From positions 62,001-126,000 of IMG/VR virus record IMGVR_UViG_3300044641_007115: a stretch of DNA of 64,000 nt. One strand, written 5' to 3'. The position numbers and the translations under genes were made by a program. The notes beneath the pieces were generated by a model. It saw nothing but the letters and a program-made list of their open reading frames with translations. It was not told the DNA's origin and made no database searches. Shown here one piece after another: positions 5,221-61,291 of the stretch (its first letter is position 1; each line of letters opens with the position of its first letter).

Positions 5221-5249
5221 TTGACATATAAGTCGTTCTGTGCTATAAT
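5221..5249 (+). promoter_or_regulatory. perfect sigma70 promoter TTGACA-17-TGnTATAAT, leaderless
   Basis: exact consensus; ATG at 5255. Confidence 0.9.
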
Positions 5250-5254
5250 GGGAT

Positions 5255-5734
5255 ATGCGCCATCTCATCCAGCCCAATTCTAGGACTTGCGGACAAACAT
5301 GCGTTGCGATGGCGGCTGGTATTGACATAGAAGCCGCCATCAAGCTGTTTGGTCACAAACACGGCACCAGCACGCGAAGCATGGTCCGTGTCCTACGTCA
5401 CCTTGGATTCAAACCGGCGGCATGTTTACAAAGGATCACTCCCGACCGGCCCATGCCGAAACGGTCCATTTGCAAGATGCGTTTCCGCCGCCGGGATGGG
5501 CGTGGATGGAAATCCGGGTGGCATTGGGTTCTGATATGGGACGGCGTGTTGTACGATCCGCTTGGTCCTGACTTCGAACACAAAGGGCAGTTCCAACTTT
5601 CCTCATTCTTGGATCTGACCCATCGTACAATAGAGAAGAATGAACTGGAACACAACAAATCTATGGAAGGTCACGTTCGCAACCATCGGCGTCGGCATCT
5701 TCCTGAATGCGATGCACTGGCCGAAAGTCGGTGA
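5255..5734 (+). CDS. C39-like cysteine peptidase
   Basis: Q..TCGQTCVAM, HWVL, YDP. Confidence 0.7.
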   Translation: MRHLIQPNSRTCGQTCVAMAAGIDIEAAIKLFGHKHGTSTRSMVRVLRHLGFKPAACLQRITPDRPMPKRSICKMRFRRRDGRGWKSGWHWVLIWDGVLYDPLGPDFEHKGQFQLSSFLDLTHRTIEKNELEHNKSMEGHVRNHRRRHLPECDALAESR

Positions 5735-6368: not shown

Positions 6369-7163
6369 ATGCTCAGCTTTCAATCTTTTCTGGCCGAAGT
6401 GTCGAACGCGGAAGCGACCGTAATCAATCTTCTTCGTCTGGCCGATAAACCCGGTACTCCGCAAGAAGGTGCCGTCGCCTTGGCCCAAGCCAAAAAACTG
6501 GCCGCGAAACACGGCTTGAATATCGATGACTTGCGTGCCAAGATGAACGCTCAGCCGCCCCGATCAGCATCCAGCGGCGGATACGATCCACGAAAGAGCG
6601 AAGGTGTGGATGCTGTGTTCGCGATGTGGGAAGCCACCATTCGCGACGCTGATGACCATCATCATGGGTTCCAGTTCACCAAGATGGCCGGTAGTGGTTC
6701 AGACATTTACCGCATCTACAAGAGTTCCAAGTATCCTGATTACGAACTCCGCATCTTCCTCTATCACTTTGAACTGTGGAAGAAAGATCAGGAGATTGCC
6801 AGTGGCACCGGCCACGGTCGAGTAGGCGCATTCCGCATGGTTCTGATTTCGATGGACTACATCAAACGGATCACAGAATGGGCGGAACAAATCCGTACCA
6901 TCGCGGAGAAGGCCGGATACGTGGTCTTCAAAGAACCCGCCGGTCATAACGGATATGAGACATGGTTGCACCACAAAAAGAACAATCGCTTCATCGTGCG
7001 CATCTATGGATACAACACCGACAAAAATGATCGCAGTCGGGGTTCAGCCGTCGCGTTCGATGAGAAGTCCAGTGTACCTATTTTCGCCAAAGCTACAGAA
7101 GACAACCCAAAATCGATCAAGACATTTACCGCCGCTTTGAAAGCCAACAAACCGGTAAAATAG
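6369..7163 (+). CDS. DUF2786-domain protein with capsid-targeting-like N-terminus
   Basis: MLSFQSFLAE; LLRLADKPGTPQEGAVALAQAKKLAAKHGL; late promoter CATAAATA 6 nt upstream. Confidence 0.7.
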   Translation: MLSFQSFLAEVSNAEATVINLLRLADKPGTPQEGAVALAQAKKLAAKHGLNIDDLRAKMNAQPPRSASSGGYDPRKSEGVDAVFAMWEATIRDADDHHHGFQFTKMAGSGSDIYRIYKSSKYPDYELRIFLYHFELWKKDQEIASGTGHGRVGAFRMVLISMDYIKRITEWAEQIRTIAEKAGYVVFKEPAGHNGYETWLHHKKNNRFIVRIYGYNTDKNDRSRGSAVAFDEKSSVPIFAKATEDNPKSIKTFTAALKANKPVK

Positions 7164-7167
7164 AACA

Positions 7168-7482
7168 ATGGAAGGAATCACGACCGATTACTACGATTGC
7201 TCCTGTCACTCTTCGGACCACACGTTGCGGTTCACGCTACACGAAGAGCACATGGGAGACGAACCGGGACTGTACAGTGAAGTACAACTTCAACAATACC
7301 GCCCGTGGTATACGCGCATTTGGCCCGCAATCAAATACATCTTTGGTTACGAATGCCGGTATGGTCATTGGGATTGTTTCCTCTTCGAAAAGGAAACCGC
7401 CATCCGCATGCGCGACTTACTCAACCGGTATCTGAAAATGCTCGAAGAGCACGAAGCTAAGACTTCGCAAGGATCTGATTGA
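7168..7482 (+). CDS. hypothetical phage protein
   Basis: CxCxxxxH near N-terminus; coupled ORF. Confidence 0.7.
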   Translation: MEGITTDYYDCSCHSSDHTLRFTLHEEHMGDEPGLYSEVQLQQYRPWYTRIWPAIKYIFGYECRYGHWDCFLFEKETAIRMRDLLNRYLKMLEEHEAKTSQGSD

Positions 7483-7825
7483 TTTTCTCTTTGTAATTCT
7501 CCACCGGCAAAACGTGAATTGGAACGTGTTCCGTATCCACCATTTTCCAATGGCGTCCCCAATTGTATTGTTTGAAGTTGTGCCCGCGAACAATCTGACC
7601 ACGATTGACTTTGACTAAGCCAATCTTCTCCATCTTCAGAATGCTCTTCAATTCGTTCTTGTTCGCGCCGGGGACATATCCCTCTTTGTCTTTCTTCGAT
7701 ACCGCAACGATCTGCCTGAACAGCTTGGCGTCGTTGACATTGAACACGACACCGCCGGGCAACCGAATTTCCTTCCGTTCCTTTGGTTTGTCTTCCGCTT
7801 CGTTAAAGGCTTGAAAAGATTTCAT
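7457..7825 (-). CDS. putative internal head protein
   Basis: N-terminus MKSFQAFNE resembles T4 capsid-targeting sequence. Confidence 0.65.
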   Translation of the reverse strand: MKSFQAFNEAEDKPKERKEIRLPGGVVFNVNDAKLFRQIVAVSKKDKEGYVPGANKNELKSILKMEKIGLVKVNRGQIVRGHNFKQYNWGRHWKMVDTEHVPIHVLPVENYKEKINQILAKS

Positions 7826-7827
7826 CA

Positions 7828-9339
7828 CTAATCCTTCGGATCGTTGAATTTGTTCTTGAACTGGTTCATCGCCTTCAGAAGTTCTTCAGCGGTATGGCCG
7901 TCTTTCAACGTCAGCGTGCTGTTGCTACCCATACCCATATTCCAATGTTTCTGAAGTGACCAGCGGCCCGTTTTCGGATCAACCACGGCGAAATACTTGC
8001 CGCCTTTGCTGCTGAAATACTCTTTCGTCGGATCGGGCCGATCCAACACTTTGTCGTCCGGGCGGAATCCGAACTGGCCCAAGATGTTGACGATCTTGTC
8101 GAAACCCATTTCGGCTTTCTTCATCAATGCTGATAGCGACCGCTCTAAGGTGTCGGCATCCTTACCCTGTGCTTTGTCACCCAACAGAGATTTGATGTCG
8201 TGGGCGGGCCGCATACCGCCGCCGGGACCCTCTTTACGGACGAACTCAGCCGTAATCATCCACCAGACTTCATCGTCTTTCTTCATCGCGCCGCGCATCT
8301 TGTTCGGACCAAACATGACCCGAAGCATTTCCACGGTGTTTGTCCAGATGTGCTGATTGCCTTGTTTGTCGAAGGGACGGAATCCGAAACTGGTCAACAC
8401 CTTGACCATGTTGTTGATTTCGTTGTGAACCGAGAACGCGGCTTCTCCGCTCTTTCTCTTTGTTGTCACCCACTTCTCAAAAGATTGTGGTCCTTTGTTC
8501 TTCTGGTCGAAACGCTTTGTGTCCAGTTTCCACTTGTTCGAAGCGCTTCCACCCTGACGGGTTTCGTGCCACCAAGCACCATCCGGCCCGACAATCAGCC
8601 GGTATGGATCACTGACCATTTCGCGGTACGATTCTCCCGTGTTGGCGGGTTTCAAAACATATCCGTGCTTCTCTGCGACTCGAACAACAGCTTCAGCTTC
8701 AGCGGTCAGCTTTTGAGCGTTGTTGTATGCCTTCTGTTCCTTTTCCCGTTGTTCCGCTTCCCGTTTGACTCTCAACCCCTTCCAGTCCACGGAGCGAAGC
8801 GCACCGATCAAATCCTGTGCGTTTGTACTCTTGGCAAGCACGTCATCCTTCGAATAACCGCCCGGACGACCGGTCGGGTCGGCATGGACCAAATACCACA
8901 TGATCGGACGTTCTCTTTCATTCTGGATGGGGAGAACAACCAACACAAAGGTTCCCTCATGAGATACACCCCACACAACAACTTCGGAACCGAACTGAGC
9001 ATAGGTGGTCCCGGAACGCATCCGTTCCCCTTTCCCTTTATGGCGGGCACCGGGGACATGACTCATGATGGTGTTGATTTCGATGAACAGCCGGTCAGCC
9101 GGATGAGTAGACGCGGAATTCGACGGCGACCGGCGCACGCTCTGTTGCTTCATCATCGACCGGGCGACTTCCAGATCGATATTGTTCTTTTTCGCTAGTG
9201 CGGTGGCTTGCGCTAAAGCGACTTCGCCTTCGTGGGGAGATCCGGGACGATCAGCAAGCGCCAATAGCTTGATGATGGTGTCCATCGCGTCCCGTTCGCT
9301 CAGAAGTTGTTCACGAAGATAGGTCAGAAAGCCACTCAT
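7828..9339 (-). CDS. DUF2786-domain protein with repeated C-terminal modules, putative internal protein
   Basis: IIKLLALADRPGSPHEGEVALAQATALAKKNNI; late promoter GGTAAATA 6 nt upstream of ATG. Confidence 0.7.
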   Translation of the reverse strand: MSGFLTYLREQLLSERDAMDTIIKLLALADRPGSPHEGEVALAQATALAKKNNIDLEVARSMMKQQSVRRSPSNSASTHPADRLFIEINTIMSHVPGARHKGKGERMRSGTTYAQFGSEVVVWGVSHEGTFVLVVLPIQNERERPIMWYLVHADPTGRPGGYSKDDVLAKSTNAQDLIGALRSVDWKGLRVKREAEQREKEQKAYNNAQKLTAEAEAVVRVAEKHGYVLKPANTGESYREMVSDPYRLIVGPDGAWWHETRQGGSASNKWKLDTKRFDQKNKGPQSFEKWVTTKRKSGEAAFSVHNEINNMVKVLTSFGFRPFDKQGNQHIWTNTVEMLRVMFGPNKMRGAMKKDDEVWWMITAEFVRKEGPGGGMRPAHDIKSLLGDKAQGKDADTLERSLSALMKKAEMGFDKIVNILGQFGFRPDDKVLDRPDPTKEYFSSKGGKYFAVVDPKTGRWSLQKHWNMGMGSNSTLTLKDGHTAEELLKAMNQFKNKFNDPKD

Positions 9340-9368
9340 AGTAGCTATTTACCATTTCCGGGAACAGT

Positions 9369-9680
9369 TCAGGCTACGGTCCAGACATCCCGCTGATGGT
9401 AGTAATTGCCAATCGCGGACAGAACCGGAGTCAATTCCTTCCGAAGTGATGAAAGATTTACCGACTCCCGGACATCCAGTGTTACGTCCACGATAGCGAT
9501 CTGTGATGTCGTTGGACTCCGATCAATCCACGGGCCGGGCACACGGAACTTCCGTCGAACGAAATTTCCATACCCCCGGTCAAACTTTCCGATGTAGACA
9601 GTCGCATACGGATCAGTCGGTTTTGAAAGAACTGGAATCGCCGCGACGATTGGCAGAGCGAACAATTGCCGTCGTGTCAT
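9369..9680 (-). CDS. hypothetical protein with twin-arginine-like signal (MTRRQLFAL)
   Basis: true start likely 9680, 5 nt after TCTAAGTA. Confidence 0.55.
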   Translation of the reverse strand: MTRRQLFALPIVAAIPVLSKPTDPYATVYIGKFDRGYGNFVRRKFRVPGPWIDRSPTTSQIAIVDVTLDVRESVNLSSLRKELTPVLSAIGNYYHQRDVWTVA

Positions 9681-9699
9681 ATTGCTACTTAGATTAACG

Positions 9700-9825
9700 C
9701 AGGGGCGTGACATCCGGCTTAGCGTACCGGAAATGAAGACTGCCATCGCGCGTCAGGCAATCTAACGTCGGACTGTTGATGGAATGTCCGCGCACCGGTT
9801 GATCGATCACTCAATCAACCACCTG
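9700..9825 (-). ncRNA. candidate structured ncRNA downstream of Ro60 (possible non-canonical Y RNA)
   Basis: own late-like promoter GATAAACT (9838-9831); four hairpins with G-U pairs favouring the minus strand; CAGG/CCUG end pairing. Confidence 0.55.
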
Positions 9826-9855
9826 AGATCAGTTTATCATGATCCCGGTCGGCTG

Positions 9856-9888
9856 AAAAACAAAAAGGCCGGACCCGAAGGCCCGGCC
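9856..9888 (-). terminator. intrinsic terminator GGCCGGGCC-TTCG-GGTCCGGCC-TTTTT
   Basis: stem, UUCG loop and U-tract; identical copies at 50286 and 60557. Confidence 0.9.
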
Positions 9889-9907
9889 AGTTTTGTTCCC
9901 CGCCTGT

Positions 9908-11566
9908 TTAGGCGGTCGTGACTTCCGTTTCGTCTTCCGATCCCGAACGGCGGCTGGTGCCACCGCGCATGAAATCGGCCAACAGAACCGGCACGTTGGC
10001 GTCGAAACCAACGAAGTCCATCATACCCATATCCTTCGGATCGGCGATGGAGAACGGCGTCGCCGCCGTTGCGATGACGGCCAGCTTCGCGTTCGGCTTA
10101 TTCCGTTCCTTGCGGTACTTCACAAGCGCTTGCGACGGCTGGATGCTACCGGCCCAAGTTTCGTTGTCCGTGATTACCGTGAAGCAATCGACGTTCAAGT
10201 TGTTCTTGATGCCGTAGATCATCGGCAACGAACAATCCGTACCGCCGCCAAGACCGCGATTCGCCTTCTTCGTTGCCGATTCCAGCGTATCCTTGGCAGT
10301 GATCTTGAGATCGACGAACTGCGTGTCGAACCCACGGATGTCGTAGTTCTGTTCCGTGCGGATGAATACCATCGCTTGCGCGGCGGCAATCATCGCGTGG
10401 GTCAGAGCCGTACCATTCCAACTCATCGTCATCGAACCCGAAAGGTCGATGCCCACCAAAAGGTTCTGTCCGGTCGGCTCCACGTTGGCGAAGGTTCCGT
10501 AGAACGCATCCATCAACGCATCGACAACCGCCGGAACCACCGTCCACGAACCGTTACCACGCTGACCGTGACCGGCACCATAGGTACCGTAGGCCAGCAA
10601 CACCTGAAGCGGGTGGACCCGCGACCGGCGCAAGTATTCGGCATCGCGCAACCGGCTGGCGACCAGCTTGGAAGCATCAGACAGCGGGGCCAACAGGCCA
10701 GACTTCGACATGTTGCCCAAGTTGCGGATCATCGCAGTCAGCGGCATCTTTTGCAAGAGCGCTTCCTGAACCGTCGCGTCGTTGAGGAACTGAGTCGGAA
10801 TCATTTCGCGCGTCAAACCGTAGTCGGACACGATCTTGATGACTTCCTTGGCCGAAGTTGCCTTCTTTGCCAACTCAACGCCGTCGATCACGCGGGACAC
10901 GTCCGGCTTGTACTCACCCTTGGCCGCGTAACGGTAGATCGCGGAGCGAACTTCGTCTTCCGGCTTCGGGTGCGCCAAACGGAGAATGTCGCGCTGTGCC
11001 CATCCTTCACGCTGTTGGTACTTCGCCAACTGGTAGGCCAGATCGCGGGGCGACTTGGCAGAATACCAGTCCTTCACAGCACGGGCCAGAACAGCACCCC
11101 AACCGCGAAGCGAAGTTGCGTAGGAAATGAACGAAAACAGATGCGTGCCCGTGCGCGCGACCACCGGCAACTTGGACGCCGCGTACTGGCGCGTCTCAAT
11201 GACCGGGGAGTCGGTCGGGGACATGGCAAGTGCCAGCGCAAACAACGCCGGATCGTTCTTCGGTGCCCGGCCCGCGTCGCTGATGCCAGCGATCACATCG
11301 ACCGTGCGCTTACCGTCTTCCTTCAGACAGGCGATCACGTTCTTCGCGTGTTCGCGGGTCAGCTTTTCCGCCGAACCACCACTTGCGTAGTAGGCCGGGT
11401 TCTCAGACCCAAGGATCAGGAAGCGCTCCAAGAGCGTCCACTTATCGACGGTGAAAACGAATCCACCGTGGGCGTTCTGCGCCATTTCATTCTCACGTCC
11501 CGGAATCGGCTGATTCTGCGGGGTCGTCTTCCGGCTTGCGCCGTGCAAGCTATAGATGTTTGCCAT
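9908..11566 (-). CDS. rsr: Ro60 / TROVE-domain RNA-binding protein (Rsr orthologue)
   Basis: NAHGGFVF, LERFLILGSE, RTGTHLF, KYQQREGW, ALIRNLG-like AMIRNLG, RVHP, vWA DLSGSM, GGTDCSLPM, ITDNETW, DFVGFDA; start M8 after AAGAGG. Confidence 0.95.
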   Translation of the reverse strand: MANIYSLHGASRKTTPQNQPIPGRENEMAQNAHGGFVFTVDKWTLLERFLILGSENPAYYASGGSAEKLTREHAKNVIACLKEDGKRTVDVIAGISDAGRAPKNDPALFALALAMSPTDSPVIETRQYAASKLPVVARTGTHLFSFISYATSLRGWGAVLARAVKDWYSAKSPRDLAYQLAKYQQREGWAQRDILRLAHPKPEDEVRSAIYRYAAKGEYKPDVSRVIDGVELAKKATSAKEVIKIVSDYGLTREMIPTQFLNDATVQEALLQKMPLTAMIRNLGNMSKSGLLAPLSDASKLVASRLRDAEYLRRSRVHPLQVLLAYGTYGAGHGQRGNGSWTVVPAVVDALMDAFYGTFANVEPTGQNLLVGIDLSGSMTMSWNGTALTHAMIAAAQAMVFIRTEQNYDIRGFDTQFVDLKITAKDTLESATKKANRGLGGGTDCSLPMIYGIKNNLNVDCFTVITDNETWAGSIQPSQALVKYRKERNKPNAKLAVIATAATPFSIADPKDMGMMDFVGFDANVPVLLADFMRGGTSRRSGSEDETEVTTA

Positions 11567-11604
11567 GTTATTTTGACCTCTTTTCAAACACTACACCGTG
11601 TTAA

Positions 11605-12276
11605 CTACTCCTGTTCATCTTCCAAACTACGCATCACGTCTTCGAAAGGCACCAGTTCGGCCCGGCCTTCTTCCACTTCATTGATGCGTTCCTTCATCTC
11701 TGCCAGAAACTCTTCGTTCTCTTTAGGACCGCCGTGAAAGCTGATATCCCAATAGATTCCTTCCAGAAATTCCAACAGACTGAGAACTCTTTTGCCGCTG
11801 AGAATTGATTCCGTCCAGTTCCGGCGGATCGTAAACGTCTCATCGATCACAACCGGGATATGCGCCAACTGGTACATCGGTGAGTACGAAACCGACCAAC
11901 GTTCTCCTTGCGCATCCACTCCAATGAAGTCCGTCGAAATGTTGAAATCATTCGTGCCATCATGCTCGAAAACTTCACCGTAGGAACTGACAACCAATTT
12001 GACCAGCGATTCTTCCAGATCCTTACGTGGCTCACGGGCCTGTGCATGGAATTCATCGATTGCCCCACACCATGCATAATGTGCAACAACTTCCTTGAGA
12101 GTCGGATGTTGATCCACAATCGCAAAAATCTGACCCAAAGTCACGCCGTCGTCAACCTTAACCCGAACTCGAAGATCGGTCAGGCGAAACGGCTTTTCGA
12201 CGTAATCCTTCTTTTCCTTTCCATCCCACTCATACGCCGCTAGGCGGTCGCTGTGGAACACAACGTAATCACTCAT
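11605..12276 (-). CDS. hypothetical phage protein
   Basis: 223-aa ORF in operon with Ro60. Confidence 0.75.
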   Translation of the reverse strand: MSDYVVFHSDRLAAYEWDGKEKKDYVEKPFRLTDLRVRVKVDDGVTLGQIFAIVDQHPTLKEVVAHYAWCGAIDEFHAQAREPRKDLEESLVKLVVSSYGEVFEHDGTNDFNISTDFIGVDAQGERWSVSYSPMYQLAHIPVVIDETFTIRRNWTESILSGKRVLSLLEFLEGIYWDISFHGGPKENEEFLAEMKERINEVEEGRAELVPFEDVMRSLEDEQE

Positions 12277-12713
12277 GTTGGTTCGTATATCTCCAGCCCC
12301 GGTATGAAACCAAGGGAATCCACAATCATGGGTCTAACGACAGACCATTGAAGTCCGCCTAAGCCACAACCGATGGCCGGGATCGCAAGACTCGAAATCT
12401 CATGATCCTTGCACCAGTCAACAAGGACCACCAGACCAGCTTCAATCCACTCTATCTTCGAGGGGTTTCGCCAATGATCCTTGGTCGCAAAGCAGACGAC
12501 CCATTTTGGCGGTGGGGTGGTGTCATGCTGAGGCAACACGATGATGTTGCCCGGAAAAAGCGTTTTTGGTTCAGCACAAGCATGACGATATGAATTTAGC
12601 ACACCCGGAAACCGATTTGCAAACTTTTTTGCAAGACCGGCTCCCATCACTCCCACACAGTTCACCGGGTTGACCCAAACCTGTGCTTGGGACCGGAACA
12701 TATCGCCCGGCAC
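12273..12713 (-). CDS. macrodomain ADP-ribosylglycohydrolase (DarG/TARG1-like)
   Basis: GD.F, NPVNCVGVMGAGLA, FATKDHWR, IPAIGCGLGGL. Confidence 0.9.
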   Translation of the reverse strand: MPGDMFRSQAQVWVNPVNCVGVMGAGLAKKFANRFPGVLNSYRHACAEPKTLFPGNIIVLPQHDTTPPPKWVVCFATKDHWRNPSKIEWIEAGLVVLVDWCKDHEISSLAIPAIGCGLGGLQWSVVRPMIVDSLGFIPGLEIYEPT

Positions 12714-12717
12714 CGGA

Positions 12718-13137
12718 TCACTCCAATTCCTTCAACTGTTTCAACAACTCTTGCCGCTTCCGTTCCTTCTCAGATTCATCCGGGCGTGACGGCATCGACA
12801 GCACGCGGAAATCGGTTACCCAAACACCCGCGTCGCCGCTACATGGTCCGCTGAAATTCGACTTCGTGTAGGTGACTTCAATTTCCTGTTGATCTTCCAT
12901 CACCTTCAGCAACCGCTTGTAGAGAGCTTCGTCTTTGACGCTGAAATGAAACGCGGACCCATTTACTCCACTACCGCCATTGAATCCGCCCCGGACCAGT
13001 TCACCTTCATAGGTGTCACAGACCATTCCATACTGGCCCATCTTAACCACTTGGCCGATCTTCTTGCCGTCGCCGCTTTTGATGCCATAGCCACAACCGA
13101 CCAAGAACAATCCCATCAACACAAGAACGTATCGCAT
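12718..13137 (-). CDS. phage lipoprotein
   Basis: signal peptide with lipobox LVGC; G.VVK..TYEGEL..FHFSV. Confidence 0.75.
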   Translation of the reverse strand: MRYVLVLMGLFLVGCGYGIKSGDGKKIGQVVKMGQYGMVCDTYEGELVRGGFNGGSGVNGSAFHFSVKDEALYKRLLKVMEDQQEIEVTYTKSNFSGPCSGDAGVWVTDFRVLSMPSRPDESEKERKRQELLKQLKELE

Positions 13138-13170
13138 ACATCCATTGTCTATCCGATACCACAGCGCACA

Positions 13171-13209
13171 AAAACAAAAACGCCCCGGCGGAACTCACCG
13201 GGGCGTTTT
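13171..13209 (-). terminator. intrinsic (bidirectional) terminator
   Basis: aaaacgccccgg / ccggggcgtttt. Confidence 0.85.
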
Positions 13210-13235
13210 GTCGTCGGGAACCAGTCCCAACTCTA

Positions 13236-13559
13236 TCACTTCGTTGTGGTTGTGATGAAACCCGAAGTGGCTGGTGTATTTGTGCCGGTTGTCGTACCAA
13301 TCACTTGGTTCGGCCCACACAAAGTCCAACGCTCCCAATTGTTCCAAGGAAAGTACGGCTTCCACACCGGTTGCGGCACTGGCACCGGCGTCGGCACGAA
13401 CTGTACCTTGTCTTTCCCCTTGACTTCTACGACCTTGATTTTCTCCACAACTTTTTGTTTGACTTGCACCTTGACGGTGTTTGTCTCTTGGTCGAAGAAA
13501 ACCTGTGCGTCGTTTGCGCCATCGATCTGAATTTTCAATCCGTTGATGGTGACTTCCAT
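13236..13559 (-). CDS. hypothetical protein
   Basis: coupled to the vWA gene; Pro/Trp/Thr-rich C-terminus. Confidence 0.65.
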   Translation of the reverse strand: MEVTINGLKIQIDGANDAQVFFDQETNTVKVQVKQKVVEKIKVVEVKGKDKVQFVPTPVPVPQPVWKPYFPWNNWERWTLCGPNQVIGTTTGTNTPATSGFITTTTK

Positions 13560-13561
13560 TC

Positions 13562-14230
13562 TTACTTCCTCTTCCCGGTGCCGGTAGTCGTGGTGAACGT
13601 CACGTTGTTTAGAACAGCTTCGTCAACATCTGCCGTCAGATTCATCGACCGGGCGGCACCAGACATTCCTTTCGACACATTCGAAGTGTAGGTGCTCCGA
13701 ACAGCACTGGTCGCATACATCGCTCCCGCTGTGTTCGCCGAAGCGTAATTGACCGAATTCATGATGTTGATGCTCGAAGCCGCCGCCGCCGCGTCCATGT
13801 CCGCGCCGAAGTAGGTGAATCCCCATCCTTGCTTTTGCCGGATGTCGATCAAGGCTTTGATCGCTTCATGGCTGAAGTTCTTCGAAGAGTTCTCCGCACC
13901 ATCGGTGAAGATGTACACCAGAACGTTTTGTTCTCCCTCTTCCGCCGTGTCGATCCGCATGCCGACAGCATCATACAATGCCGTCATTCCATTCGGAGTG
14001 TAATCGGCGGTCCCGATTTCCTTCACTTCGCTCAAGGGCTTGTCAGCAAACACCACTGTAGCTTCAGATGAGAACTTGGTGAGACTGACCGTGTACTCAA
14101 CGTCCTTGGTCTTCTCTTCCTTTCTCATTTCCTGAATCTGTTCATTGAATCCATTGATGACGGTCTTCTGTTGACCTTGCATCGACCCGGATTCGTCCAA
14201 GATAAACTCAACTCTGATTTTGTTCTTCAT
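13562..14230 (-). CDS. vWA-domain protein
   Basis: MIDAS DESGSM, TALYDA, TDG.EN.S; SD AAGGAG. Confidence 0.9.
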   Translation of the reverse strand: MKNKIRVEFILDESGSMQGQQKTVINGFNEQIQEMRKEEKTKDVEYTVSLTKFSSEATVVFADKPLSEVKEIGTADYTPNGMTALYDAVGMRIDTAEEGEQNVLVYIFTDGAENSSKNFSHEAIKALIDIRQKQGWGFTYFGADMDAAAAASSINIMNSVNYASANTAGAMYATSAVRSTYTSNVSKGMSGAARSMNLTADVDEAVLNNVTFTTTTGTGKRK

Positions 14231-14266
14231 GCTCCTTTCCTTGGGTGCATCTTGCCACCCCTATGT

Positions 14267-14446
14267 TTATGTAGACTGTCCACCAACGGTTTTCGTGCGC
14301 AAAGTCGAATTCTTTTCCAACTTTTCACGCAACCGCCGGGCGGCGTCCAGTTTGAGGAAGGCAATCTCATAGTTGCCGTTCTTCTTGGCGGACTCCGCTT
14401 CGAGTTCGCACCGGTCAATTTCAGCTTGAATCAAATCACGATCCAT
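14267..14446 (-). CDS. small helical protein, UVR-motif-like (59 aa, not in ORF track)
   Basis: MDRDLIQAEIDRCELEAESAKKNGNYEIAFLKLDAARRLREKLE... Confidence 0.55.
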   Translation of the reverse strand: MDRDLIQAEIDRCELEAESAKKNGNYEIAFLKLDAARRLREKLEKNSTLRTKTVGGQST

Positions 14447-14474
14447 GACCTTCTCCCAACCCCTAAAATGAACT

Positions 14475-14879
14475 TTACCTACTGGTAGTGCTGACTTCGG
14501 AAAACGAGATCGGTGGTGTGTGCTCGAAATCGTAATCCATCACTTCATCATGAGCAATCATCGCCATTCGGTAGTGATGCCGATCTTTGTGCATGATGAT
14601 GCGAATGATGATATTGTCATCGCTGAAATTCGGCAAGCAATCGACAAGGAACCCATCCACGATATTCTTTTCTTTCGCAACGTTCAGAACCGGCGTCAAT
14701 GCCATCTTGAGTTGCGAACAGGAAAAATTGTCTGTGAATAGACCTAGTTGAGCCGCCCGCTGAACCACACCAAATAGATTGTCGCGCAAACCATTCAGGT
14801 CATTGAACCCGGATGGTATGGGCCACATTTCTTCGGTATCAGCACCGACAACTACATCATTTGATAATCGAAATGCCAT
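14475..14879 (-). CDS. protein resembling the C-terminal domain of T4 gp18 tail sheath
   Basis: AAQLGLF..F..SQL...LTPVL....IVDGFLVDC parallels gp18 AA...LFE.ND.FTR..F...V.P.L...GI.DF.VVC. Confidence 0.45.
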   Translation of the reverse strand: MAFRLSNDVVVGADTEEMWPIPSGFNDLNGLRDNLFGVVQRAAQLGLFTDNFSCSQLKMALTPVLNVAKEKNIVDGFLVDCLPNFSDDNIIIRIIMHKDRHHYRMAMIAHDEVMDYDFEHTPPISFSEVSTTSR

Positions 14880-14903
14880 TGACTTCCTTCATCGTAGCGT
14901 GGA

Positions 14904-15110
14904 CTATCCCAAGCGAAAACTGACAACTTTTCCTTCATTCACCGTGAAGGTTACACGGTTTTGTTTCACGTCATTGGTTAACGGGACCGGCATGCCGGGT
15001 TGAATCACGCGCACTTCCATGCCTAGCTGTGTCGCTTTCGCTGTGGCTTCGGTGATCGGCTGTCCCATGAAATTCTGTTTGACGGCAATCGCTAAGGCTT
15101 CATTCAACAT
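14904..15110 (-). CDS. I78/potato-inhibitor-I-like peptidase inhibitor
   Basis: RVIQPG..LTND...NRVTF.V..G.V....G. Confidence 0.55.
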   Translation of the reverse strand: MLNEALAIAVKQNFMGQPITEATAKATQLGMEVRVIQPGMPVPLTNDVKQNRVTFTVNEGKVVSFRLG

Positions 15111-15369
15111 CTGGTTCTTCCTCTTCATCTTCTTCTTCGTCTTCATCAGGTTCCCGGCTGAGCCAAAGAACAATGACCAATACCAACGCACTGATAGAAA
15201 CAAACGCTCCTGACCATGCGGCAATCACAACAACCGGATTGGACGGGAATGTGTGAATGGACCAATTGACAGAAACGTAGAGCGCTGTCAATAGCAGGAT
15301 AAGAAGATTGATCCCACCGAAAACAGCGGCGTATTCAGCAATGCGTGAACGGATTTTGTCGGGTTGCAC
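15100..15369 (-). CDS. membrane protein with acidic tail
   Basis: two TM segments; GTG 6 nt after TCTAAATC. Confidence 0.7.
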   Translation of the reverse strand: MQPDKIRSRIAEYAAVFGGINLLILLLTALYVSVNWSIHTFPSNPVVVIAAWSGAFVSISALVLVIVLWLSREPDEDEEEDEEEEPDVE

Positions 15370-15384
15370 GTGATGGATTTAGAC

Positions 15385-15801
15385 ACGCCAGAAGACGGCA
15401 TCCCAATCATATTGAGTCTGTTGTGCAATTGCTCGGTTCGGTGGAAATGGAATCTACCTAGCGCGGGCTACTCCGCTAAGTCGATTCCCTTTCGCGTCTG
15501 TCGTGCTTCGGACAGGCGGTCGCCCTTGATCTTGGTGGTCGCTACCAGTGGTTCTCTATCGGTGGCTCCGGGGTCATACCACATTCTTCCAAGTTCCCCA
15601 CTGAAGGGGTCAGGTATGGGTCCGGTAACTGACGACACTCCACACGCCGCTCTACATGGTCTGTTGTGGGTATTCCCACCGTTTGCCAAAAGCCATGCAG
15701 CCGGGTCAATTCCCGACGAACTGCGGTCCTACGTGCCGGGCACCTTTCGGTGCCGATATTCTGCGATTAGGCTTGGGTGACTGAGAACGTCTTGAGCGCC
15801 T
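15385..15801 (-). ncRNA. large structured ncRNA of unknown class (~417 nt)
   Basis: 5'/3' closing helices (AAGACG/CGUCUU; UCUCAGUCA/UGAUUGGGA), many internal stems, GAAA tetraloop, no credible ORF, promoter-like GCTATATA at 15815-15808. Confidence 0.75.
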
Positions 15802-15854
15802 GATTCCTATATAGCATACAGGTTCGTTGTTCAGAACCTAAAACGGCGAAGTCC

Positions 15855-16289
15855 ATGAAAACATTCCAAAGATTCCTTCGAGAGTCATACGAACTCTTGC
15901 CCGGCACCCTGCTCTTGATCGTTCAGGGTGGCGGATTCAGCCGTCGTATCCAGTATGGCGTAACGACCGGGCGGGTGGTTTTCAAAATCAACAACCTTCA
16001 TCAGCACGGTCATGAGTTCAAAGGCACACCGACACATGAAGTGATCGACATCGGCGGAATGCAAACTGAAGTTCTTTTGCCGGGCGTCAAGCCCGGCGAC
16101 ATCATCCAAAGCCATTTGCAGTTGGATGGTCTTCCCGGTGGGTCGATAATTGAATCCACCTTGCCGGGGTCGGACGGCCAGTACAAGAAAACGGATTCGA
16201 TGAAGTGGACCAAGGTTGGTTCTCCGACCGGCGCGAAATTTGACTCGTTTCACTTTGACGCATCGCTTAAATACAAGTGGGTCAAATAA
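15855..16289 (+). CDS. putative internal head protein
   Basis: N-terminus MKTFQRFLRE (capsid-targeting-like). Confidence 0.65.
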   Translation: MKTFQRFLRESYELLPGTLLLIVQGGGFSRRIQYGVTTGRVVFKINNLHQHGHEFKGTPTHEVIDIGGMQTEVLLPGVKPGDIIQSHLQLDGLPGGSIIESTLPGSDGQYKKTDSMKWTKVGSPTGAKFDSFHFDASLKYKWVK

Positions 16290-16292
16290 TCT

Positions 16293-16847
16293 ATGCCAAT
16301 GGACACTACAGCCGAACAACTCATCGGCATCATCAAACGCCAGCCTTCGAACCCCAACTTTTTGAATGCTCATCGTTTTCGGATGGTTCTTCATCGCACG
16401 CCGTCGATGATCTACTTCATGCAAGAAGTCAACCTTCCGGGAATTTCCACTGGTGCGCCGATTCAACCAACGCCGTTTGTGGACATCCCGCATCACGGCG
16501 ACAAGCTGGTGTTTGAAGATTTGACGGTGAGTTTCGCTATCGATGAGGACATGAAGAATTACAGGGAAATCCAACAGTGGTTGTATGGATTGACCTTTCC
16601 GCAACGGTTCGAACAACATGCCGATCTTGTGCAAGGAATGCATAACCGGTACTCCGATATTCTACTGGTGATCCTCAACAGCAACTACAATCCACAACAC
16701 TACGTCATGTTCCGTCAGGCGTGGCCGTCTTCGCTTGGATCGATCCAGTTCAATTCGAAGGATCAGGACGTGGTTGTACAGCCGGTTTCTGTCACATTCA
16801 AGTATGCGTATTATGAATTTTTGGATATCGGCGACGTGTCATCATAA
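16293..16847 (+). CDS. gp3: tail completion / sheath stabiliser (T4 gp3-like)
   Basis: NFL...F...QEVNLPGIS, GDKL.FEDL..F.IDEDMKNY; position upstream of uvsY. Confidence 0.85.
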   Translation: MPMDTTAEQLIGIIKRQPSNPNFLNAHRFRMVLHRTPSMIYFMQEVNLPGISTGAPIQPTPFVDIPHHGDKLVFEDLTVSFAIDEDMKNYREIQQWLYGLTFPQRFEQHADLVQGMHNRYSDILLVILNSNYNPQHYVMFRQAWPSSLGSIQFNSKDQDVVVQPVSVTFKYAYYEFLDIGDVSS

Positions 16848-16880
16848 GTCCTAAGTGATTCACTCACGAAAGGACAACTC

Positions 16881-17459
16881 ATGCTCGAAACAATGCTGGC
16901 TCTAACGGGCCTTGCGTTTTGGACGGTTGCAATCGGCACCGTCATTTTCTGTCTCATCATTATGGCCTTGGTAGAGTACAACCGGCCATTTTGGGCGACG
17001 ACCCTGATGATCGTCACGATCAGCGGATTGGTGTTCGTTACCAAGTACCCGCTGTGGGACGAAATCCGTGCAAACCCTCTTTTGCTGGTCTACTGGACCA
17101 TCGGCTATTTGCTGATCGGTGCCGGTTGGTCTTTATTCAAGTGGTGGCGGTACGTGGATCGGACTGTCAAGCGTTGGTCGAAGAGCGACTATTCCGGTCA
17201 TAAGCGAAATCTGGAAATGATTCGGTCAGCGGATTCAGATTCTACGGTCCAACTGCCATCGGAAATTGATCCGGGGAACAACAAGGATCGTTTCTTCGGC
17301 TGGACCTTATACTGGCCCTTCTCCGGGATCTGGACATTACTGGATGATCCGCTCCGGGCGGCGTTTGAGTTCATGTATGAACAGTTTGGTCAAATCTATA
17401 CCAAGATCGCTCAGCGTGTGGCCCGGCGGATCGCTTCGAGTGTCAAACTGACATCCTAA
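16881..17459 (+). CDS. multi-pass membrane protein
   Basis: three N-terminal TM segments; Y..IGAGWS.FKW; W.LYWPFS. Confidence 0.75.
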   Translation: MLETMLALTGLAFWTVAIGTVIFCLIIMALVEYNRPFWATTLMIVTISGLVFVTKYPLWDEIRANPLLLVYWTIGYLLIGAGWSLFKWWRYVDRTVKRWSKSDYSGHKRNLEMIRSADSDSTVQLPSEIDPGNNKDRFFGWTLYWPFSGIWTLLDDPLRAAFEFMYEQFGQIYTKIAQRVARRIASSVKLTS

Positions 17460-18035: not shown

Positions 18036-18251
18036 ATGAGTGCATTCTATTTCCACTTCAACAAACCAGCCACACAGCGCGCCGGGAAAGTGCAAGTCAG
18101 TCTGCACTACAAAGACACTTGTCATGTGATCGATAACATTGACTGTCGCGTGCCCGTGCGCGGGCGCATACGCAAGACTCAACCCCGGTTTGTCATGGCC
18201 GGGAAAGCGAAGTCCGTTCGCTTTGAAGATGGCGTGGCGGTGATCGAATGA
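18036..18251 (+). CDS. hypothetical phage protein
   Basis: MSAFYFHFNKP...QPRFVMAGKA; overlaps the next start. Confidence 0.7.
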   Translation: MSAFYFHFNKPATQRAGKVQVSLHYKDTCHVIDNIDCRVPVRGRIRKTQPRFVMAGKAKSVRFEDGVAVIE

Positions 18252-18571
18252 AAGTCTACCAAGACCCGGTATACCGGTTCAATTTCGACAAGATGACCCG
18301 CCGGGACATGTGGGCCTTTTTGTTGATGCTGGTGACGGCTCCGTCGCTGGCCGTTCAAGCGTGGAAGATGTACAAGGCACCGAAGACGGTTGCCAGTGCA
18401 TTGATGGTTGGCTACAAAGGAACAACTCCATTTGAAGCCGGTTTCTTCTATGCGCCATACATTCCGCTGCAAATGGTTTCGCCCATTCCTACGACAAAAC
18501 CGCCGGTGGCGTTCAAAACTCGATACGGAACATATTCAGGTTCGAGTTACTATAGAAAGGTACAGCTATGA
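18248..18571 (+). CDS. mini-protein carrying a T4 gp23 major-capsid C-terminal segment behind a Tat/TM-like leader
   Basis: VGYKG.TPFEAGFFYAPYIPLQMV...P.VAFKTRYG is the gp23 C-terminal signature. Confidence 0.75.
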   Translation: MKVYQDPVYRFNFDKMTRRDMWAFLLMLVTAPSLAVQAWKMYKAPKTVASALMVGYKGTTPFEAGFFYAPYIPLQMVSPIPTTKPPVAFKTRYGTYSGSSYYRKVQL

Positions 18572-60583: not shown

Positions 60584-60617
60584 GTGTCTAACATACGGGT
60601 TCCTGTAAATATCGGTG

Positions 60618-60899
60618 ATGGCAGAACCGATCAGCATTTCCGTGGAGTTTGCTTCGTATAGCCGCACCAAGGACAACGAATATCTTGGCGAAGAGAAATT
60701 CACCGGCACTCGTTTAACACAATTGGCGCATAGCATCGCGGCGCATCTTCTCCCGCTCGAACGGTTCCATTCCGGTGTCGAATTTGAGATCGTCTCCTAT
60801 CATCGGCATGACGTGTCTTTCGACTCCCGGTGCAAACGACAACTGGAAGGAATGACGGAGCTTTTTCGAGTCCTTGTAGATCAAGTACTTAAGAGATAA
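60618..60899 (+). CDS. hypothetical late protein
   Basis: ATG 6 nt after TGTAAATA. Confidence 0.6.
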   Translation: MAEPISISVEFASYSRTKDNEYLGEEKFTGTRLTQLAHSIAAHLLPLERFHSGVEFEIVSYHRHDVSFDSRCKRQLEGMTELFRVLVDQVLKR

Positions 60900-60944
60900 C
60901 CGCACTTGTATGTCAAAAATTGCGGACGCCTAAACAGTGTCAGC

Positions 60945-61118
60945 ATGAGTGACTTTCGGAAACTTAGCATCATTTGCCAGTACTGTGAATCGACGTTTGT
61001 GTTGCGATTCGACGAAGCCTTTGACGGGCCACAATTCTGCCCATTTTGCGGAGAGCCACTGGACCTAGAAGAAGATGACGATGACCTAGAACCAGCGGAT
61101 GAGGATGATGACGACTAA
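60945..61118 (+). CDS. small zinc-ribbon protein with acidic tail
   Basis: CQYC...CPFCG followed by a D/E tail. Confidence 0.7.
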   Translation: MSDFRKLSIICQYCESTFVLRFDEAFDGPQFCPFCGEPLDLEEDDDDLEPADEDDDD

Positions 61119-61291
61119 AGCCAGTTCCATGTCCGACGCTTCCAGATGTGATGAGCAGCAATCATTTTTCCATCAATTCGAAAAGAACCATATCGACCAT
61201 TGGATGACAGACACCCTGTCCATTTCCAACAGGTTTCACTTTTCTGAACTTTTGACCAAAACCGGTTTTGGTGTTCGGCGGTAACTAGCAT
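61115..61291 (-). pseudogene. internally deleted HNH homing endonuclease remnant (58 aa)
   Basis: RFWSKV.K..TCW.WTG....YG.F...GK...AH joined directly to C-terminal I..RRTW.WL; HNH core absent. Confidence 0.7.

What the first reader, a model, noticed from the sequence alone, without database searches (positions are those of the whole stretch)
15385..15801. Unassigned ~417-nt end-paired, multi-domain ncRNA on the minus strand
Seen: this is the only large ORF-free gap in an otherwise densely coding window. Read on the minus strand, its ends pair in a long closing helix (GCGCU/GGCGU, AAGACG/CGUCUU, UCUCAGUCA/UGAUUGGGA). Internal stems include GGCACC-GAAA-GGUGCC, GUCGGG/CCCGGC, CUGCAUGG/CCAUGUAG, GUGGG/CCCAC, CAUACC/GGUAUG, CCCC/GGGG, CUGUC/GACAG, GGAAUC/GAUUCC, CUUAGC/GCUAGG and GUGGAG/UUCCAC. 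The G-U pairs and GNRA loop work only on the minus strand. The 10-mer CACAACAGAC occurs twice (15416-25, 15659-68). A promoter-like GCTATATA sits 6 nt before the 5' helix, and the 3' helix ends right at the next gene's promoter. It lacks the RNase P (GAGGAAAGUCC), tmRNA and group I intron signatures I could check. Inference: a large phage ncRNA comparable to the GOLLD/ROOL/OLE classes, possibly a new class. It heads the minus-strand block that leads to Ro60 about 4 kb downstream.
Basis: partly seen in the sequence, partly recalled or inferred. Interest (0 to 1): 0.92.

Follow-up and report, generated by a model that had tools for sequence, protein, structure and literature searches.

The report
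New large structured phage RNA
The gap holds a real, previously uncatalogued ~400-base folded RNA, shared by a small group of uncultured T4-like phages and kept in shape by many paired mutations; what it does is still unknown.

Summary
Real feature, and its main reading is right. The 485-nt gap (15370-15854) between two divergent gene blocks of an uncultured T4-like phage carries a conserved non-coding element on the minus strand.

I found 10 distinct homologues (44-95% identical), all in uncultured T4-like phage contigs.
- The 16-helix consensus fold is 89.7% paired, against about 36% when partners are slid.
- 45 of 75 pairs show compensatory changes.
- A fold derived from five sequences also held on four sequences found later.

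No Rfam 15 family matches. It carries no RNase P, tmRNA, T-loop or Y RNA signature.

- The long 5'/3' closing helix is specific to the window. It does no better than shuffles across homologues, and one homologue lacks the whole 5' part. The 5' end is instead a local modular hairpin.
- GUGGAG/UUCCAC is wrong.
- The repeated 10-mer is not conserved.
- Ro60 linkage holds in one clade only, and a strong terminator separates them.

New observations:
- A conserved extended -10-like motif (TGnTATAnAn) lies just upstream.
- There are two candidate pseudoknots.
- A three-way covariation points to mutually exclusive helices.
- The gene behind the RNA differs between phages.

Function is unknown. My best guess is a promoter-proximal switching leader; a trans-acting ornate RNA is nearly as likely.

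The parts
15807..15816 (-). Promoter-like motif TGCTATATAG, read as an extended -10 (TG-n-TATATA). It ends 6 nt before the first conserved RNA base.
   Evidence: The same motif sits at the same offset in all 12 full or partial homologues: TGCTATATAG or TGATATATAG (window clade), TGGTATAAAT (L025, L046, L044, L048), TGGTATAGAT (L049), TGCTAAGAT (L042). It occurs once in the 64-kb window. The promoter function is inferred.
15404..15801 (-). Conserved structured RNA core (about 398 nt). The 5' end is predicted from the promoter motif. The 3' end is undefined; conservation fades after about 15404.
   Evidence: nhmmer E-values of 1e-67 to 1e-127 against homologues. Alignments A7 and A8. Covariation statistics.
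15769..15801 (-). H1, a local 5' hairpin built of modules: AGGC-(nnUCAA)-GAC-loop-GUC-(nnnCAA)-GCCU.
   Evidence: The same layout is found in 9 sequences. The inner pair switches from A-U to G-C. L025 has three modules and L042 has none.
15739..15754 (-). H2, a GNRA hairpin (GGCACC-GAAA-GGUGCC).
   Evidence: 5 of 6 pairs show compensatory changes; 94% of cells are paired (helix 2).
15700..15717 (-). H3 hairpin (GUCGGG-AAUUGA-CCCGGC).
   Evidence: helices 4 and 5: 85-93% paired, with compensatory changes.
15653..15699 (-). H4 (UGCAUGG/CCAUGUA) enclosing H5 (GUGGG-AAUA-CCCAC).
   Evidence: helices 6 and 7. Six of 7 H4 pairs covary. H5 shows a double compensatory change already between the window and L003.
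15560..15646 (-). Central domain: H6 (CGUGUGG/CCAC-CG), H7 (CCGG/CCGG), H8 (CAUACC/GGUAUG), H9 (CCC/GGG), and a 2-bp stem that closes the conserved loop UUGGAAGAAU.
   Evidence: helices 8-12. H6 covaries at 7 of 7 pairs and H8 at 4 of 6.
15521..15547 (-). Candidate H-type pseudoknot. UGGU/ACCA (15547-15544 with 15536-15533) crosses CGACC/GGGCG (15541-15537 with 15525-15521). The conserved strand AAGAUCAAG lies between.
   Evidence: UGGU/ACCA changes to UGCC/GGCA in five homologues. The crossing helix has 4 covarying pairs (helix 13).
15498..15515 (-). H11 hairpin, CUGUC-CGAAGCAC-GACAG, with a conserved 8-nt loop.
   Evidence: helix 14. It was used as the search pattern.
15450..15488 (-). H12-H14 stem-loop domain: GGAAUC.ACU..GCGG-loop-CCGC..GGU.GAUUCC.
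   Evidence: helices 15 and 16: 91-100% paired, 8 covarying pairs.
15587..15591 (-). Loop bases UGGAA. They are complementary to UUCCA at 15452-15448, which is also the 3' strand of H12, so the two pairings exclude each other.
   Evidence: 95.6% paired in 9 sequences, with 3 compensatory pairs. All three strands change together in L011 and L044, and in L049. L052 keeps this pairing while an H12 pair is broken.
15404..15447 (-). Conserved 3' tail, mostly unpaired in the model (..CCGAACCGAGC..CACAAC..CAAUAUGAUUG).
   Evidence: CGAACCGA and CACAAC are invariant or nearly so in type-1 sequences and L011. No partner was found.
15377..15387 (-). CGUGUCUAAAU, invariant in the window clade. It lies 7 nt before the GTG start of the membrane-protein gene, and there is no Shine-Dalgarno sequence.
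   Evidence: It is absent from homologues that have other genes downstream, so it belongs with the downstream gene rather than the RNA core.
15385..15409 (-). It is present in the window but not conserved.
15100..15369 (-). First gene behind the RNA: an 89-aa predicted membrane protein with an acidic tail, starting at GTG.
   Evidence: Conserved as a protein (35-75% identity) in L003, L011 and L013.
15364..15780 (+). Spurious 138-aa ORF antisense to the RNA.
   Evidence: Broken by 1- and 2-nt indels in L003. No family hit. No stop-free frame is shared across homologues.

Best explanation
The gap encodes a new family of structured RNA of about 400 nt. It occurs in uncultured T4-like phages.

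Shown:
- It is non-coding and lies on the minus strand.
- It folds into at least 16 helices that are kept by compensatory mutations.
- There are two candidate pseudoknots.

Inferred:
- Host RNA polymerase transcribes it from its own extended -10 promoter.
- No terminator follows it, so it forms the 5' part of the transcript that carries the genes behind it.

Most likely mechanism (inferred, not tested): it acts in cis as a promoter-proximal leader that toggles between two folds. The loop UUGGAA and the H12 5' strand compete for the same UUCCA strand. The toggle would set the expression of whatever accessory gene cassette lies downstream. It could do this by sensing a ligand or protein, or by altering the transcribing polymerase so that it reads through the terminators that lie further down the gene block.
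For: RNA and fold:
- 10 distinct homologues.
- 89.7% of cells paired, against 75.4% in shuffles (0 of 500 reach it) and about 36% when slid. 45 of 75 pairs are compensatory.
- Hold-out test: a fold derived from 5 sequences is 85.6% paired in L046 and L049, with 20-21 compensatory changes against the window.
- No conserved ORF.
- G-U excess on the minus strand.

Leader reading:
- The conserved TGnTATA motif lies 6-8 nt before the RNA in every homologue. In L042 an intrinsic terminator of the upstream gene precedes it.
- A same-strand gene follows in all 9 full-length homologues, and no terminator was found after the RNA in the window. In several cases its start codon lies 26-50 nt from the conserved tail.
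- The first gene of the window clade has a GTG start and no Shine-Dalgarno sequence.
- Three-way covariation marks two mutually exclusive helices that are both under selection.
- Strong intrinsic terminators lie inside the downstream co-directional block (13209-13177 and 9888-9867).
Against: - The downstream genes share no single function: a membrane protein, NadE, an RNA ligase and unknown small proteins.
- No recognisable expression platform was found: no terminator or anti-terminator pair, and no helix that sequesters a ribosome-binding site.
- The distance to the next start codon varies from about 26 to about 125 nt.
- The element is much larger and more sequence-constrained than known leaders of this type.
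- In phage genomes with long co-directional blocks, lying upstream of a same-strand gene is weak evidence.
- The three-way covariation rests on few independent events (L011/L044, L049, L052).
- The transcript ends are not known.
Confidence: 0.4

Rival explanations
1. It is a trans-acting, stable, 'ornate' RNA. It would be cut out of, or terminated from, the early transcript. It would work through its three-dimensional fold, as a scaffold, decoy or self-assembling particle, as is suspected for GOLLD, ROOL and OLE.
For: - Sequence constraint is very high compared with its neighbours. The RNA is 77% identical between the window and L013, while the flanking proteins are 58% and about 35% identical.
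- The promoter plus RNA unit is kept intact while the gene behind it is swapped.
- Loops and junctions are conserved as strongly as the helices.
- Its size and pseudoknots are typical of RNAs with a complex tertiary fold.
Against: - No terminator or conserved 3' end was found.
- No tRNA genes flank it, unlike many GOLLD and ROOL loci.
- No partner protein co-occurs with it.
- The two mutually exclusive helices fit a switch better than a static scaffold.
Confidence: 0.35
2. It is a giant Y-RNA-like partner of the phage Ro60. It would bind Ro60 and tether or regulate it in RNA quality control or repair.
For: - Ro60 (TROVE plus vWA, 9908-11587) lies 3.8 kb downstream on the same strand in the window, L011 and L013.
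- No YrlA or Y RNA hit lies near Ro60, and the 161-nt gap after Ro60 holds only a terminator. The phage therefore lacks a recognised Y RNA.
- Other contexts hold an RNA ligase and a macro-domain protein, which recalls bacterial rsr-Y RNA-rtcB loci.
Against: - Known Y RNAs are 80-130 nt, with a terminal stem formed by the two ends (PMC4201824). Here the terminal stem is not conserved.
- No T-arm-like or UGGUCCGA-like motif is present.
- The called genes in L042, L044, L046 and L049, and the long ORFs of L025, include no TROVE gene inside the fetched flanks.
- A strong terminator separates the RNA from Ro60 in the window.
Confidence: 0.08
3. It is a ribozyme, for example one that cleaves itself at its 3' side to release a leaderless or differently translated downstream mRNA.
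For: - It has a pseudoknotted multi-domain fold with invariant unpaired nucleotides.
- The first gene of the window clade starts at GTG, with no Shine-Dalgarno sequence, at a fixed 7 nt after an invariant motif.
Against: - No match to any ribozyme family in Rfam 15.
- No RNase P or hammerhead core motif.
- The 3' region is the least conserved part.
Confidence: 0.07
4. It is not an RNA at all, but a small protein gene or a DNA-level site such as an origin, a packaging site or a protein-binding array.
For: A 138-aa ORF spans the gap on the plus strand. The region sits between divergent gene blocks, where DNA control sites are common.
Against: - The ORF is broken in L003 by indels that are not multiples of three, and no frame is shared by the homologues.
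- Compensatory changes, and G-U pairs on one strand only, are signatures of RNA pairing.
- No repeat array is present.
Confidence: 0.02

Closest known systems
GOLLD, ROOL and OLE (large 'ornate' bacterial and phage RNAs, Rfam; cryo-EM in PMC12286853)
   Same: Large, multi-domain and pseudoknotted. Strongly conserved. Found in phages or prophages. No known biochemical function. Discovered through covariation.
   Different: No sequence or structure match. It is shorter: about 400 nt, against roughly 580-800 by my recollection. No flanking tRNA genes. It lies directly behind a promoter and in front of genes. Oligomer formation was not tested.
Processive antitermination RNAs (phage HK022 putL and putR; Bacillus EAR)
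   Same: Promoter-proximal folded RNA at the head of a phage or accessory operon that contains internal terminators. The action would be in cis.
   Different: Those RNAs are, by my recollection, about 70-120 nt with two stem-loops or one pseudoknot. This RNA has no similarity to them, and no Rfam family matched here. Antitermination was not tested. This is a functional analogy only.
Bacterial and phage Y RNAs (YrlA, YrlB), partners of Ro60 (PMC4201824)
   Same: A non-coding RNA on the same strand and in the neighbourhood of a phage Ro60 gene, with RNA-repair-type genes nearby.
   Different: About four times larger. No conserved terminal stem. No tRNA-like T or D arms. It is 3.8 kb from Ro60 and separated from it by a terminator. 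Most lineages have no Ro60 nearby.
Bacterial RNase P RNA
   Same: Similar length, several domains, long-range pairings, and an ACAGA-type motif near the 3' end.
   Different: No hit to any RNase P model even at E <= 10. No CR-I sequence (GAGGAAAGUCC, up to 2 mismatches) and no exact ACAGAA in any homologue. No conserved P1 or P4 equivalent.
Large pseudoknotted riboswitches and leaders (cobalamin, T-box)
   Same: An upstream, same-strand position. A conserved core with a variable 3' region. Competing helices.
   Different: No Rfam match. About twice their size. No coherent regulon. No recognisable expression platform.

Membership tests
Any Rfam 15 family (including GOLLD, ROOL, OLE, HEARO, raiA, riboswitches, ribozymes, EAR) | Covariance-model score at or above the family's gathering score | tested here: not met
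   No hits at gathering score on the whole window. At E <= 10 there were only unrelated noise hits, none inside the RNA on its own strand, and none recurring between the window and homologues L012, L025 and L008.
RNase P RNA | Conserved regions CR-I (GAGGAAAGUCC) and CR-V (ACAGAA..GGCUUA) that form P4 | tested here: not met
   No match within 2 mismatches to CR-I, and no exact ACAGAA, in any of 10 homologues. No RNase P model hit.
RNase P RNA | P1 helix formed by the 5' and 3' ends | tested here: not met
   The terminal helix is not conserved: 60.2% paired against 59.5% in shuffles. L042 lacks the 5' segment.
tmRNA | tRNA-like domain plus a tag reading frame (ARAGORN) | tested here: not met
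   ARAGORN found none in the window or in 9 loci.
Group I or group II intron | Interrupts a gene, with exons on both sides on the same strand | tested here: not met
   In the window the RNA lies between divergent genes, so there is no upstream exon on the minus strand. No intron model hit.
Y RNA / YrlA | 80-130 nt, with a long stem formed by the two ends that carries the Ro60 site | tested here: not met
   The core is about 400 nt, and the end-to-end stem is not conserved.
Y RNA / YrlA | tRNA-like domain (T arm, D arm) | tested here: not met
   No GGUUCGAAUCC-like or UUCGAAU motif that recurs in the family. No tRNA-like call by ARAGORN.
Y RNA / YrlA | Encoded next to Ro60 (TROVE) | tested here: inconclusive
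   The RNA is on the same strand as Ro60 and 3.8 kb upstream of it in the window clade only, with an intrinsic terminator between them. The loci of five other lineages include no TROVE gene, but their complete genomes were not available.
Y RNA / YrlA | Binds Ro60 | not testable with these tools
   This needs a pull-down or gel shift with the phage Ro60.
Riboswitch (generic) | Upstream of, and on the same strand as, the regulated genes | tested here: met
   True for all 9 full-length homologues.
Riboswitch (generic) | Downstream genes share a pathway that points to a ligand | tested here: inconclusive
   NadE (L025), a macro domain and Ro60 further down (window clade), an RNA ligase (L042), and unknown small proteins (L044, L046, L049). 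An NAD/ADP-ribose or RNA-repair theme is possible but not significant.
Riboswitch (generic) | Expression platform (terminator or ribosome-site sequestering helix) coupled to the aptamer | tested here: not met
   No terminator after the RNA in the window. No conserved pairing to the start region was found. Competing helices do exist inside the core.
Processive antitermination RNA | Promoter-proximal position, with intrinsic terminators downstream in the same transcription direction | tested here: met
   The promoter-like motif lies 6 nt upstream. Terminators lie at 13209-13177 and 9888-9867 on the minus strand. This is position only; activity cannot be tested here.

The most novel reading that the evidence does not exclude
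This is a previously undescribed class of large pseudoknotted phage RNA that works as a conformational switch at the head of early accessory gene cassettes. It could be a new riboswitch class for a signal tied to infection or defence, such as an NAD- or ADP-ribose-related metabolite. It could instead be a new kind of RNA that reprograms the transcribing polymerase.
Probability: 0.3. Interest if true: 0.85.

Novelty: new variant of a known kind. Interest (0 to 1): 0.72.

Why it matters
Large, highly structured RNAs with unknown jobs are rare, and each one found so far has opened a new line of RNA biology. This one has several useful properties:
- It comes with strong comparative support.
- It has a clear transcription start signal.
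- It has candidate pseudoknots and a pair of competing helices, which gives an immediate experimental handle: lock each helix and read out the genes behind it.
- It sits in the variable, accessory part of T4-like phage genomes, next to RNA-repair and NAD-related genes (Ro60, macro domain, RNA ligase, NadE). Its function may therefore bear on how phages manage host defence or RNA damage.
- It is small enough (about 400 nt) for chemical probing and cryo-EM.

Tried and rejected
- **Rfam:** gathering thresholds on the whole window, and E <= 10 on 1 kb, on 10 kb and on three homologue loci. Only noise came back.
- **ARAGORN:** no tRNA or tmRNA in the window. Among the loci, only three tRNA-Ser genes 2.4 kb away in L042.
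- **Isolate phages:** BLASTN of four family members against 50,697 genomes found no match.
- **Exact-pattern scans:** four patterns on IMG/VR returned only the window clade, and the fourth also returned five chance matches. One scan of JGI metagenomes gave 14 loci, of which 3 were true (L015 and L017 duplicate L013; L025 was new) and 11 were chance matches. One scan of GTDB genomes gave 6 chance matches.
- **Protein neighbours:** homologues of the adjacent 144-aa protein and of the gp13-like neck protein of L025 gave the useful new loci. The 132-aa upstream protein of L046 found only itself.
tested and rejected as a family feature.
- **Other long-range pairings rejected:** GUUCG/CGAAC, GGCACG/CGUGUC, CUUGG/CCAAG, and pairing of the variable 5-mer after H2 to the start-codon region. 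Each was inconsistent between homologues or clashed with better-supported helices.
- **Group I intron:** a resemblance to the R and S elements (ACAGACU.., AAGAU..) was considered. The order is reversed, the two are not complementary, and there are no exons.
- **Sarcin-ricin-loop-like GUAGGACC and a T-loop-like H11 loop:** both considered and dropped, because the defining features are missing.
- **Literature:** three full-text searches and look-ups in two papers found no description of this RNA.
- **PHROG and Pfam:** no function for the small downstream proteins.
- **Second 'gap' at 60600-61289:** it holds small ORFs and folds worse than shuffles.
Full report
**Setting**

The window comes from an uncultured T4-like phage.
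- It encodes UvsY, UvsW, a gp19-type tail tube, gp46/47-like nuclease subunits, family B DNA polymerase, UvsX, a gp41-type helicase and NAMPT.
- Its polymerase is only about 40% identical to the nearest isolates, which are cyanomyophages.
- The finding lies in a 485-nt stretch (15370-15854) between two divergent blocks.
- The minus-strand block starts with an 89-aa membrane-protein gene (15100-15369). It runs through a VWA protein, a macro-domain protein and Ro60 (9908-11587) to a DUF2786 protein.
- The plus-strand block starts at 15855 with a 144-aa gene and the tail tube gene.

**Is the observation there?**

The gap is not mechanically ORF-free, because a 138-aa TTG ORF (15364-15780, plus strand) covers it. 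That ORF has an odd composition and no Pfam or PHROG hit. In the 95%-identical relative L003 it is cut into three frames by 1- and 2-nt indels. Across nine homologues no stop-free frame is shared. The region is therefore non-coding.

The single sequence folds no better than dinucleotide shuffles: z = -1.5 on the minus strand and -1.3 on the plus strand. The comparative evidence below overrides it.

**Homologues**

No isolate phage genome has anything similar. The family members came from three routes:
- Homologues of the neighbouring 144-aa protein gave L003-L005, L011/L012, L013 and the partial L014.
- One exact-pattern scan of metagenomes gave L025 in a different genomic context, plus eleven chance matches that nhmmer rejected.
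- Homologues of the gp13-like neck protein next to L025 gave L042/L043, L044/L045, L046/L047, L048, L049 and L052.

In all there are ten distinct sequences that are full length or nearly so. They are 44-95% identical and all sit in T4-like phage contigs. IMG/VR holds only the window clade, and GTDB genomes hold none. The family is rare in the collections searched.

The RNA is better conserved than its neighbours. The window and L013 are 77% identical over the RNA, while the flanking proteins are 58% and about 35% identical.

**Structure**

RNAalifold on nine sequences (alignment A7) gives 75 pairs in 16 helices, and 45 of those pairs carry compensatory double changes.
- 89.7% of cells are paired, against 75.4 +/- 1.0% in column shuffles (0 of 500 reach the observed value) and 32-39% when the 3' partners are slid by 1-3 columns.
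- The covariation score is 0.493, against 0.233 in shuffles and 0.07-0.11 when slid.

Because that fold was derived from the same sequences, I also ran a hold-out test. I took the fold predicted from the first five sequences and scored it on four sequences found later.
- It is 74.3% paired overall, against 34-43% when slid.
- It is 85.6% paired in L046 and in L049, each with 20-21 compensatory changes relative to the window.
- The two most divergent sequences, L044 and L042, reach 56% and 68% paired, with 19 and 14 compensatory changes.

G-U cells outnumber A-C cells by 54 to 14, so the fold works better on the minus strand (89.7% against 83.6%). This is a real structured RNA, read from the minus strand.

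Supported by covariation:
- the GNRA hairpin GGCACC/GGUGCC
- GUCGGG/CCCGGC
- UGCAUGG/CCAUGUA
- GUGGG/CCCAC
- CAUACC/GGUAUG
- CCCC/GGGG
- CUGUC/GACAG
- GGAAUC/GAUUCC
- the inner part of CUUAGC/GCUAGG

Not supported:
- **The three-part closing helix between the ends.** Across homologues it is 60.2% paired, against 59.5% in shuffles, with no excess covariation. A strong 5'-3' duplex exists only in the window (z = -2.7; about -1 or weaker elsewhere).
- **L042 lacks the whole 5' segment.** There the RNA starts at the GNRA hairpin, directly after a terminator and a promoter-like motif.
- **The 5' end is a local hairpin instead.** It has the form AGGC-(nnUCAA)-GRC-loop-GYC-(nnnCAA)-GCC. The inner pair switches between A-U and G-C, and L025 has a third module.
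- **GUGGAG/UUCCAC is replaced** by CGUGUGG/CCAC-CG, where all seven pairs covary.
- **The repeated 10-mer is chance.** Its first copy is partly a helix strand and changes in L003.

**New structural points**

1. UGGU/ACCA (15547-15544 with 15536-15533) switches to UGCC/GGCA in five homologues. It crosses the helix CGACC/GGGCG, which gives an H-type pseudoknot around the conserved strand AAGAUCAAG.
2. The conserved hairpin loop UUGGAA (15591-15587) is complementary to UUCCA (15452-15448). That pairing is 95.6% kept in nine sequences, with three compensatory pairs. UUCCA is also the 3' strand of helix H12.
3. All three strands change together.
   - In L011 and L044 the loop, the H12 5' strand and the shared strand all change.
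   - In L049 the loop change restores a Watson-Crick pair where H12 gets only a G-U pair.
   - In L052 an H12 pair is broken while the loop pair is kept.

Two mutually exclusive helices, both under selection, are most simply read as a conformational switch. The number of independent events is small.

**Surroundings**

*Upstream motif.* A motif sits 6-8 nt upstream of the first conserved base in every full or partial homologue:
- TGCTATATAG or TGATATATAG in the window clade
- TGGTATAAAT in L025, L046, L044 and L048
- TGGTATAGAT in L049
- TGCTAAGAT in L042

I read it as an extended -10 promoter (TG-n-TAnnnn) for the host sigma-70 polymerase. A weak -35-like TTGAAA or TTCTGA lies 17 nt upstream in some members. 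This is an inference from the sequence. The motif occurs only once in the window. It also resembles the T4 late promoter TATAAATA in some members, so the timing of expression is open.

*Downstream.* No terminator follows the RNA in the window, and a same-strand gene always follows. That gene differs between lineages:
- a small membrane protein in the window clade
- NadE in L025
- an Rnl-type RNA ligase in L042, whose true ATG lies just 3' of the RNA
- unrelated small proteins in L044
- a pair of homologous small proteins in L046 and L049

In the window clade an invariant CGUGUCUAAAU lies exactly 7 nt before the GTG start, with no Shine-Dalgarno sequence.

*Ro60.* It follows the RNA only in the window clade. 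A strong terminator (14-bp stem plus a U run, 13209-13177) lies between them, and a second terminator (9888-9867) ends the Ro60 unit.

**Comparison with known families**

No Rfam 15 model matches at gathering score. At E <= 10 nothing recurs between homologues. This covers GOLLD, ROOL, OLE, HEARO, raiA, RNase P, tmRNA, group I and II introns, and all riboswitch and ribozyme families in that release.

Motif checks were also negative: no RNase P CR-I within 2 mismatches, no exact ACAGAA, no T-loop, no Y RNA UGGUCCGA, no 11-nt receptor and no hammerhead core. ARAGORN finds nothing.

Known Y RNAs are 80-130 nt and end-paired (PMC4201824), and this RNA is neither. Literature searches found no description of it. 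A catalogue of more than 10,000 candidate viral RNA structures exists (PMC10690425), and I could not check it by sequence.

**How it most likely works**

*Shown:* a conserved, non-coding, minus-strand, multi-helix RNA with candidate pseudoknots and competing helices.

*Inferred:* it has its own promoter and is co-transcribed with whatever lies downstream.

My preferred reading (confidence about 0.4) is a promoter-proximal, cis-acting leader that toggles between two folds and so sets the expression of the accessory cassette behind it. It could do this by sensing a ligand or protein, or by modifying the polymerase so that it reads through the downstream terminators.

Nearly as likely (about 0.35) is a stable, trans-acting ornate RNA in the manner of GOLLD or ROOL. 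The very strong sequence constraint favours that reading, as does the way the promoter plus RNA unit is kept while the downstream genes are swapped.

A Ro60 partner (about 0.08) and a ribozyme (about 0.07) remain possible. Protein-coding or DNA-site readings are effectively excluded.

**Verdict**

The finding is real. The proposed end-paired architecture and the Ro60 connection do not hold. The element is a new family within the known kind 'large structured RNAs of unknown function'. It has an unusually clear experimental entry point in its promoter, its pseudoknots and its competing helices.

Noticed in passing
window 13177-13209 (minus) and 9867-9888 (minus): Two strong intrinsic terminators lie inside the minus-strand block. 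The first (14-bp stem plus a U run) splits the block between the 107-aa and 139-aa genes. The second lies directly after the Ro60 stop codon.
   Followed up: partly
window 9908-11587 (minus), with 12273-12713, 13562-14230 and 7828-9339: A phage Ro60 homologue (TROVE plus vWA) sits with a macro-domain protein, a separate VWA protein and a DUF2786 protein carrying a weak HicA-like match. No Y RNA or YrlA was detected anywhere in 7000-17000.
   Followed up: partly
window 9747-9866 (minus): The spacer after the Ro60 terminator folds into further stable hairpins (z = -5.7 for 9747-9910, terminator included). It contains a TGATAAACT motif that could be the promoter of the next gene.
   Followed up: no
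window 18248-18571 (plus): A 107-aa ORF matches only the C-terminal part (profile positions 291-353) of the T4 major capsid protein family Gp23. It may be a fragment or a small capsid-related gene.
   Followed up: no
window 5241-5249 (plus): The only perfect extended -10 (TGCTATAAT) in the window lies 6 nt before the ATG of the gene at 5255-5734. A transcript started there would be nearly leaderless.
   Followed up: no
window 34857-36245 (plus): A NAMPT (NadV-type) NAD salvage gene. Together with the macro domain here and NadE behind the RNA in L025, NAD-related genes recur around this RNA family.
   Followed up: no
L025 1728-1790 (plus): The 5' hairpin of this homologue has three nested GGC/GCC-type modules, made by tandem duplication of both halves (UCAAGGCA twice, UUCCAGCCG twice).
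   Followed up: partly
L042 7544-7845 (minus): Three tandem tRNA-Ser genes (anticodons GCT, TGA, GGA) lie on the far side of the gp13-like gene, 2.4 kb from the RNA.
   Followed up: no
L011, L044, L042, L046: 3' edge of the RNA: AUAUGAUGG is conserved at the 3' edge. It opens a 10-codon ORF in L011, a 13-codon ORF overlapping the ligase start in L042, and the 98-aa gene in L044. It could be a leader peptide start or an RNA-level motif.
   Followed up: partly
window 60906-61118 (plus): A small ORF with a CxxC...CxxC zinc-ribbon-like pattern and an acidic tail, lying in a run of short genes.
   Followed up: no
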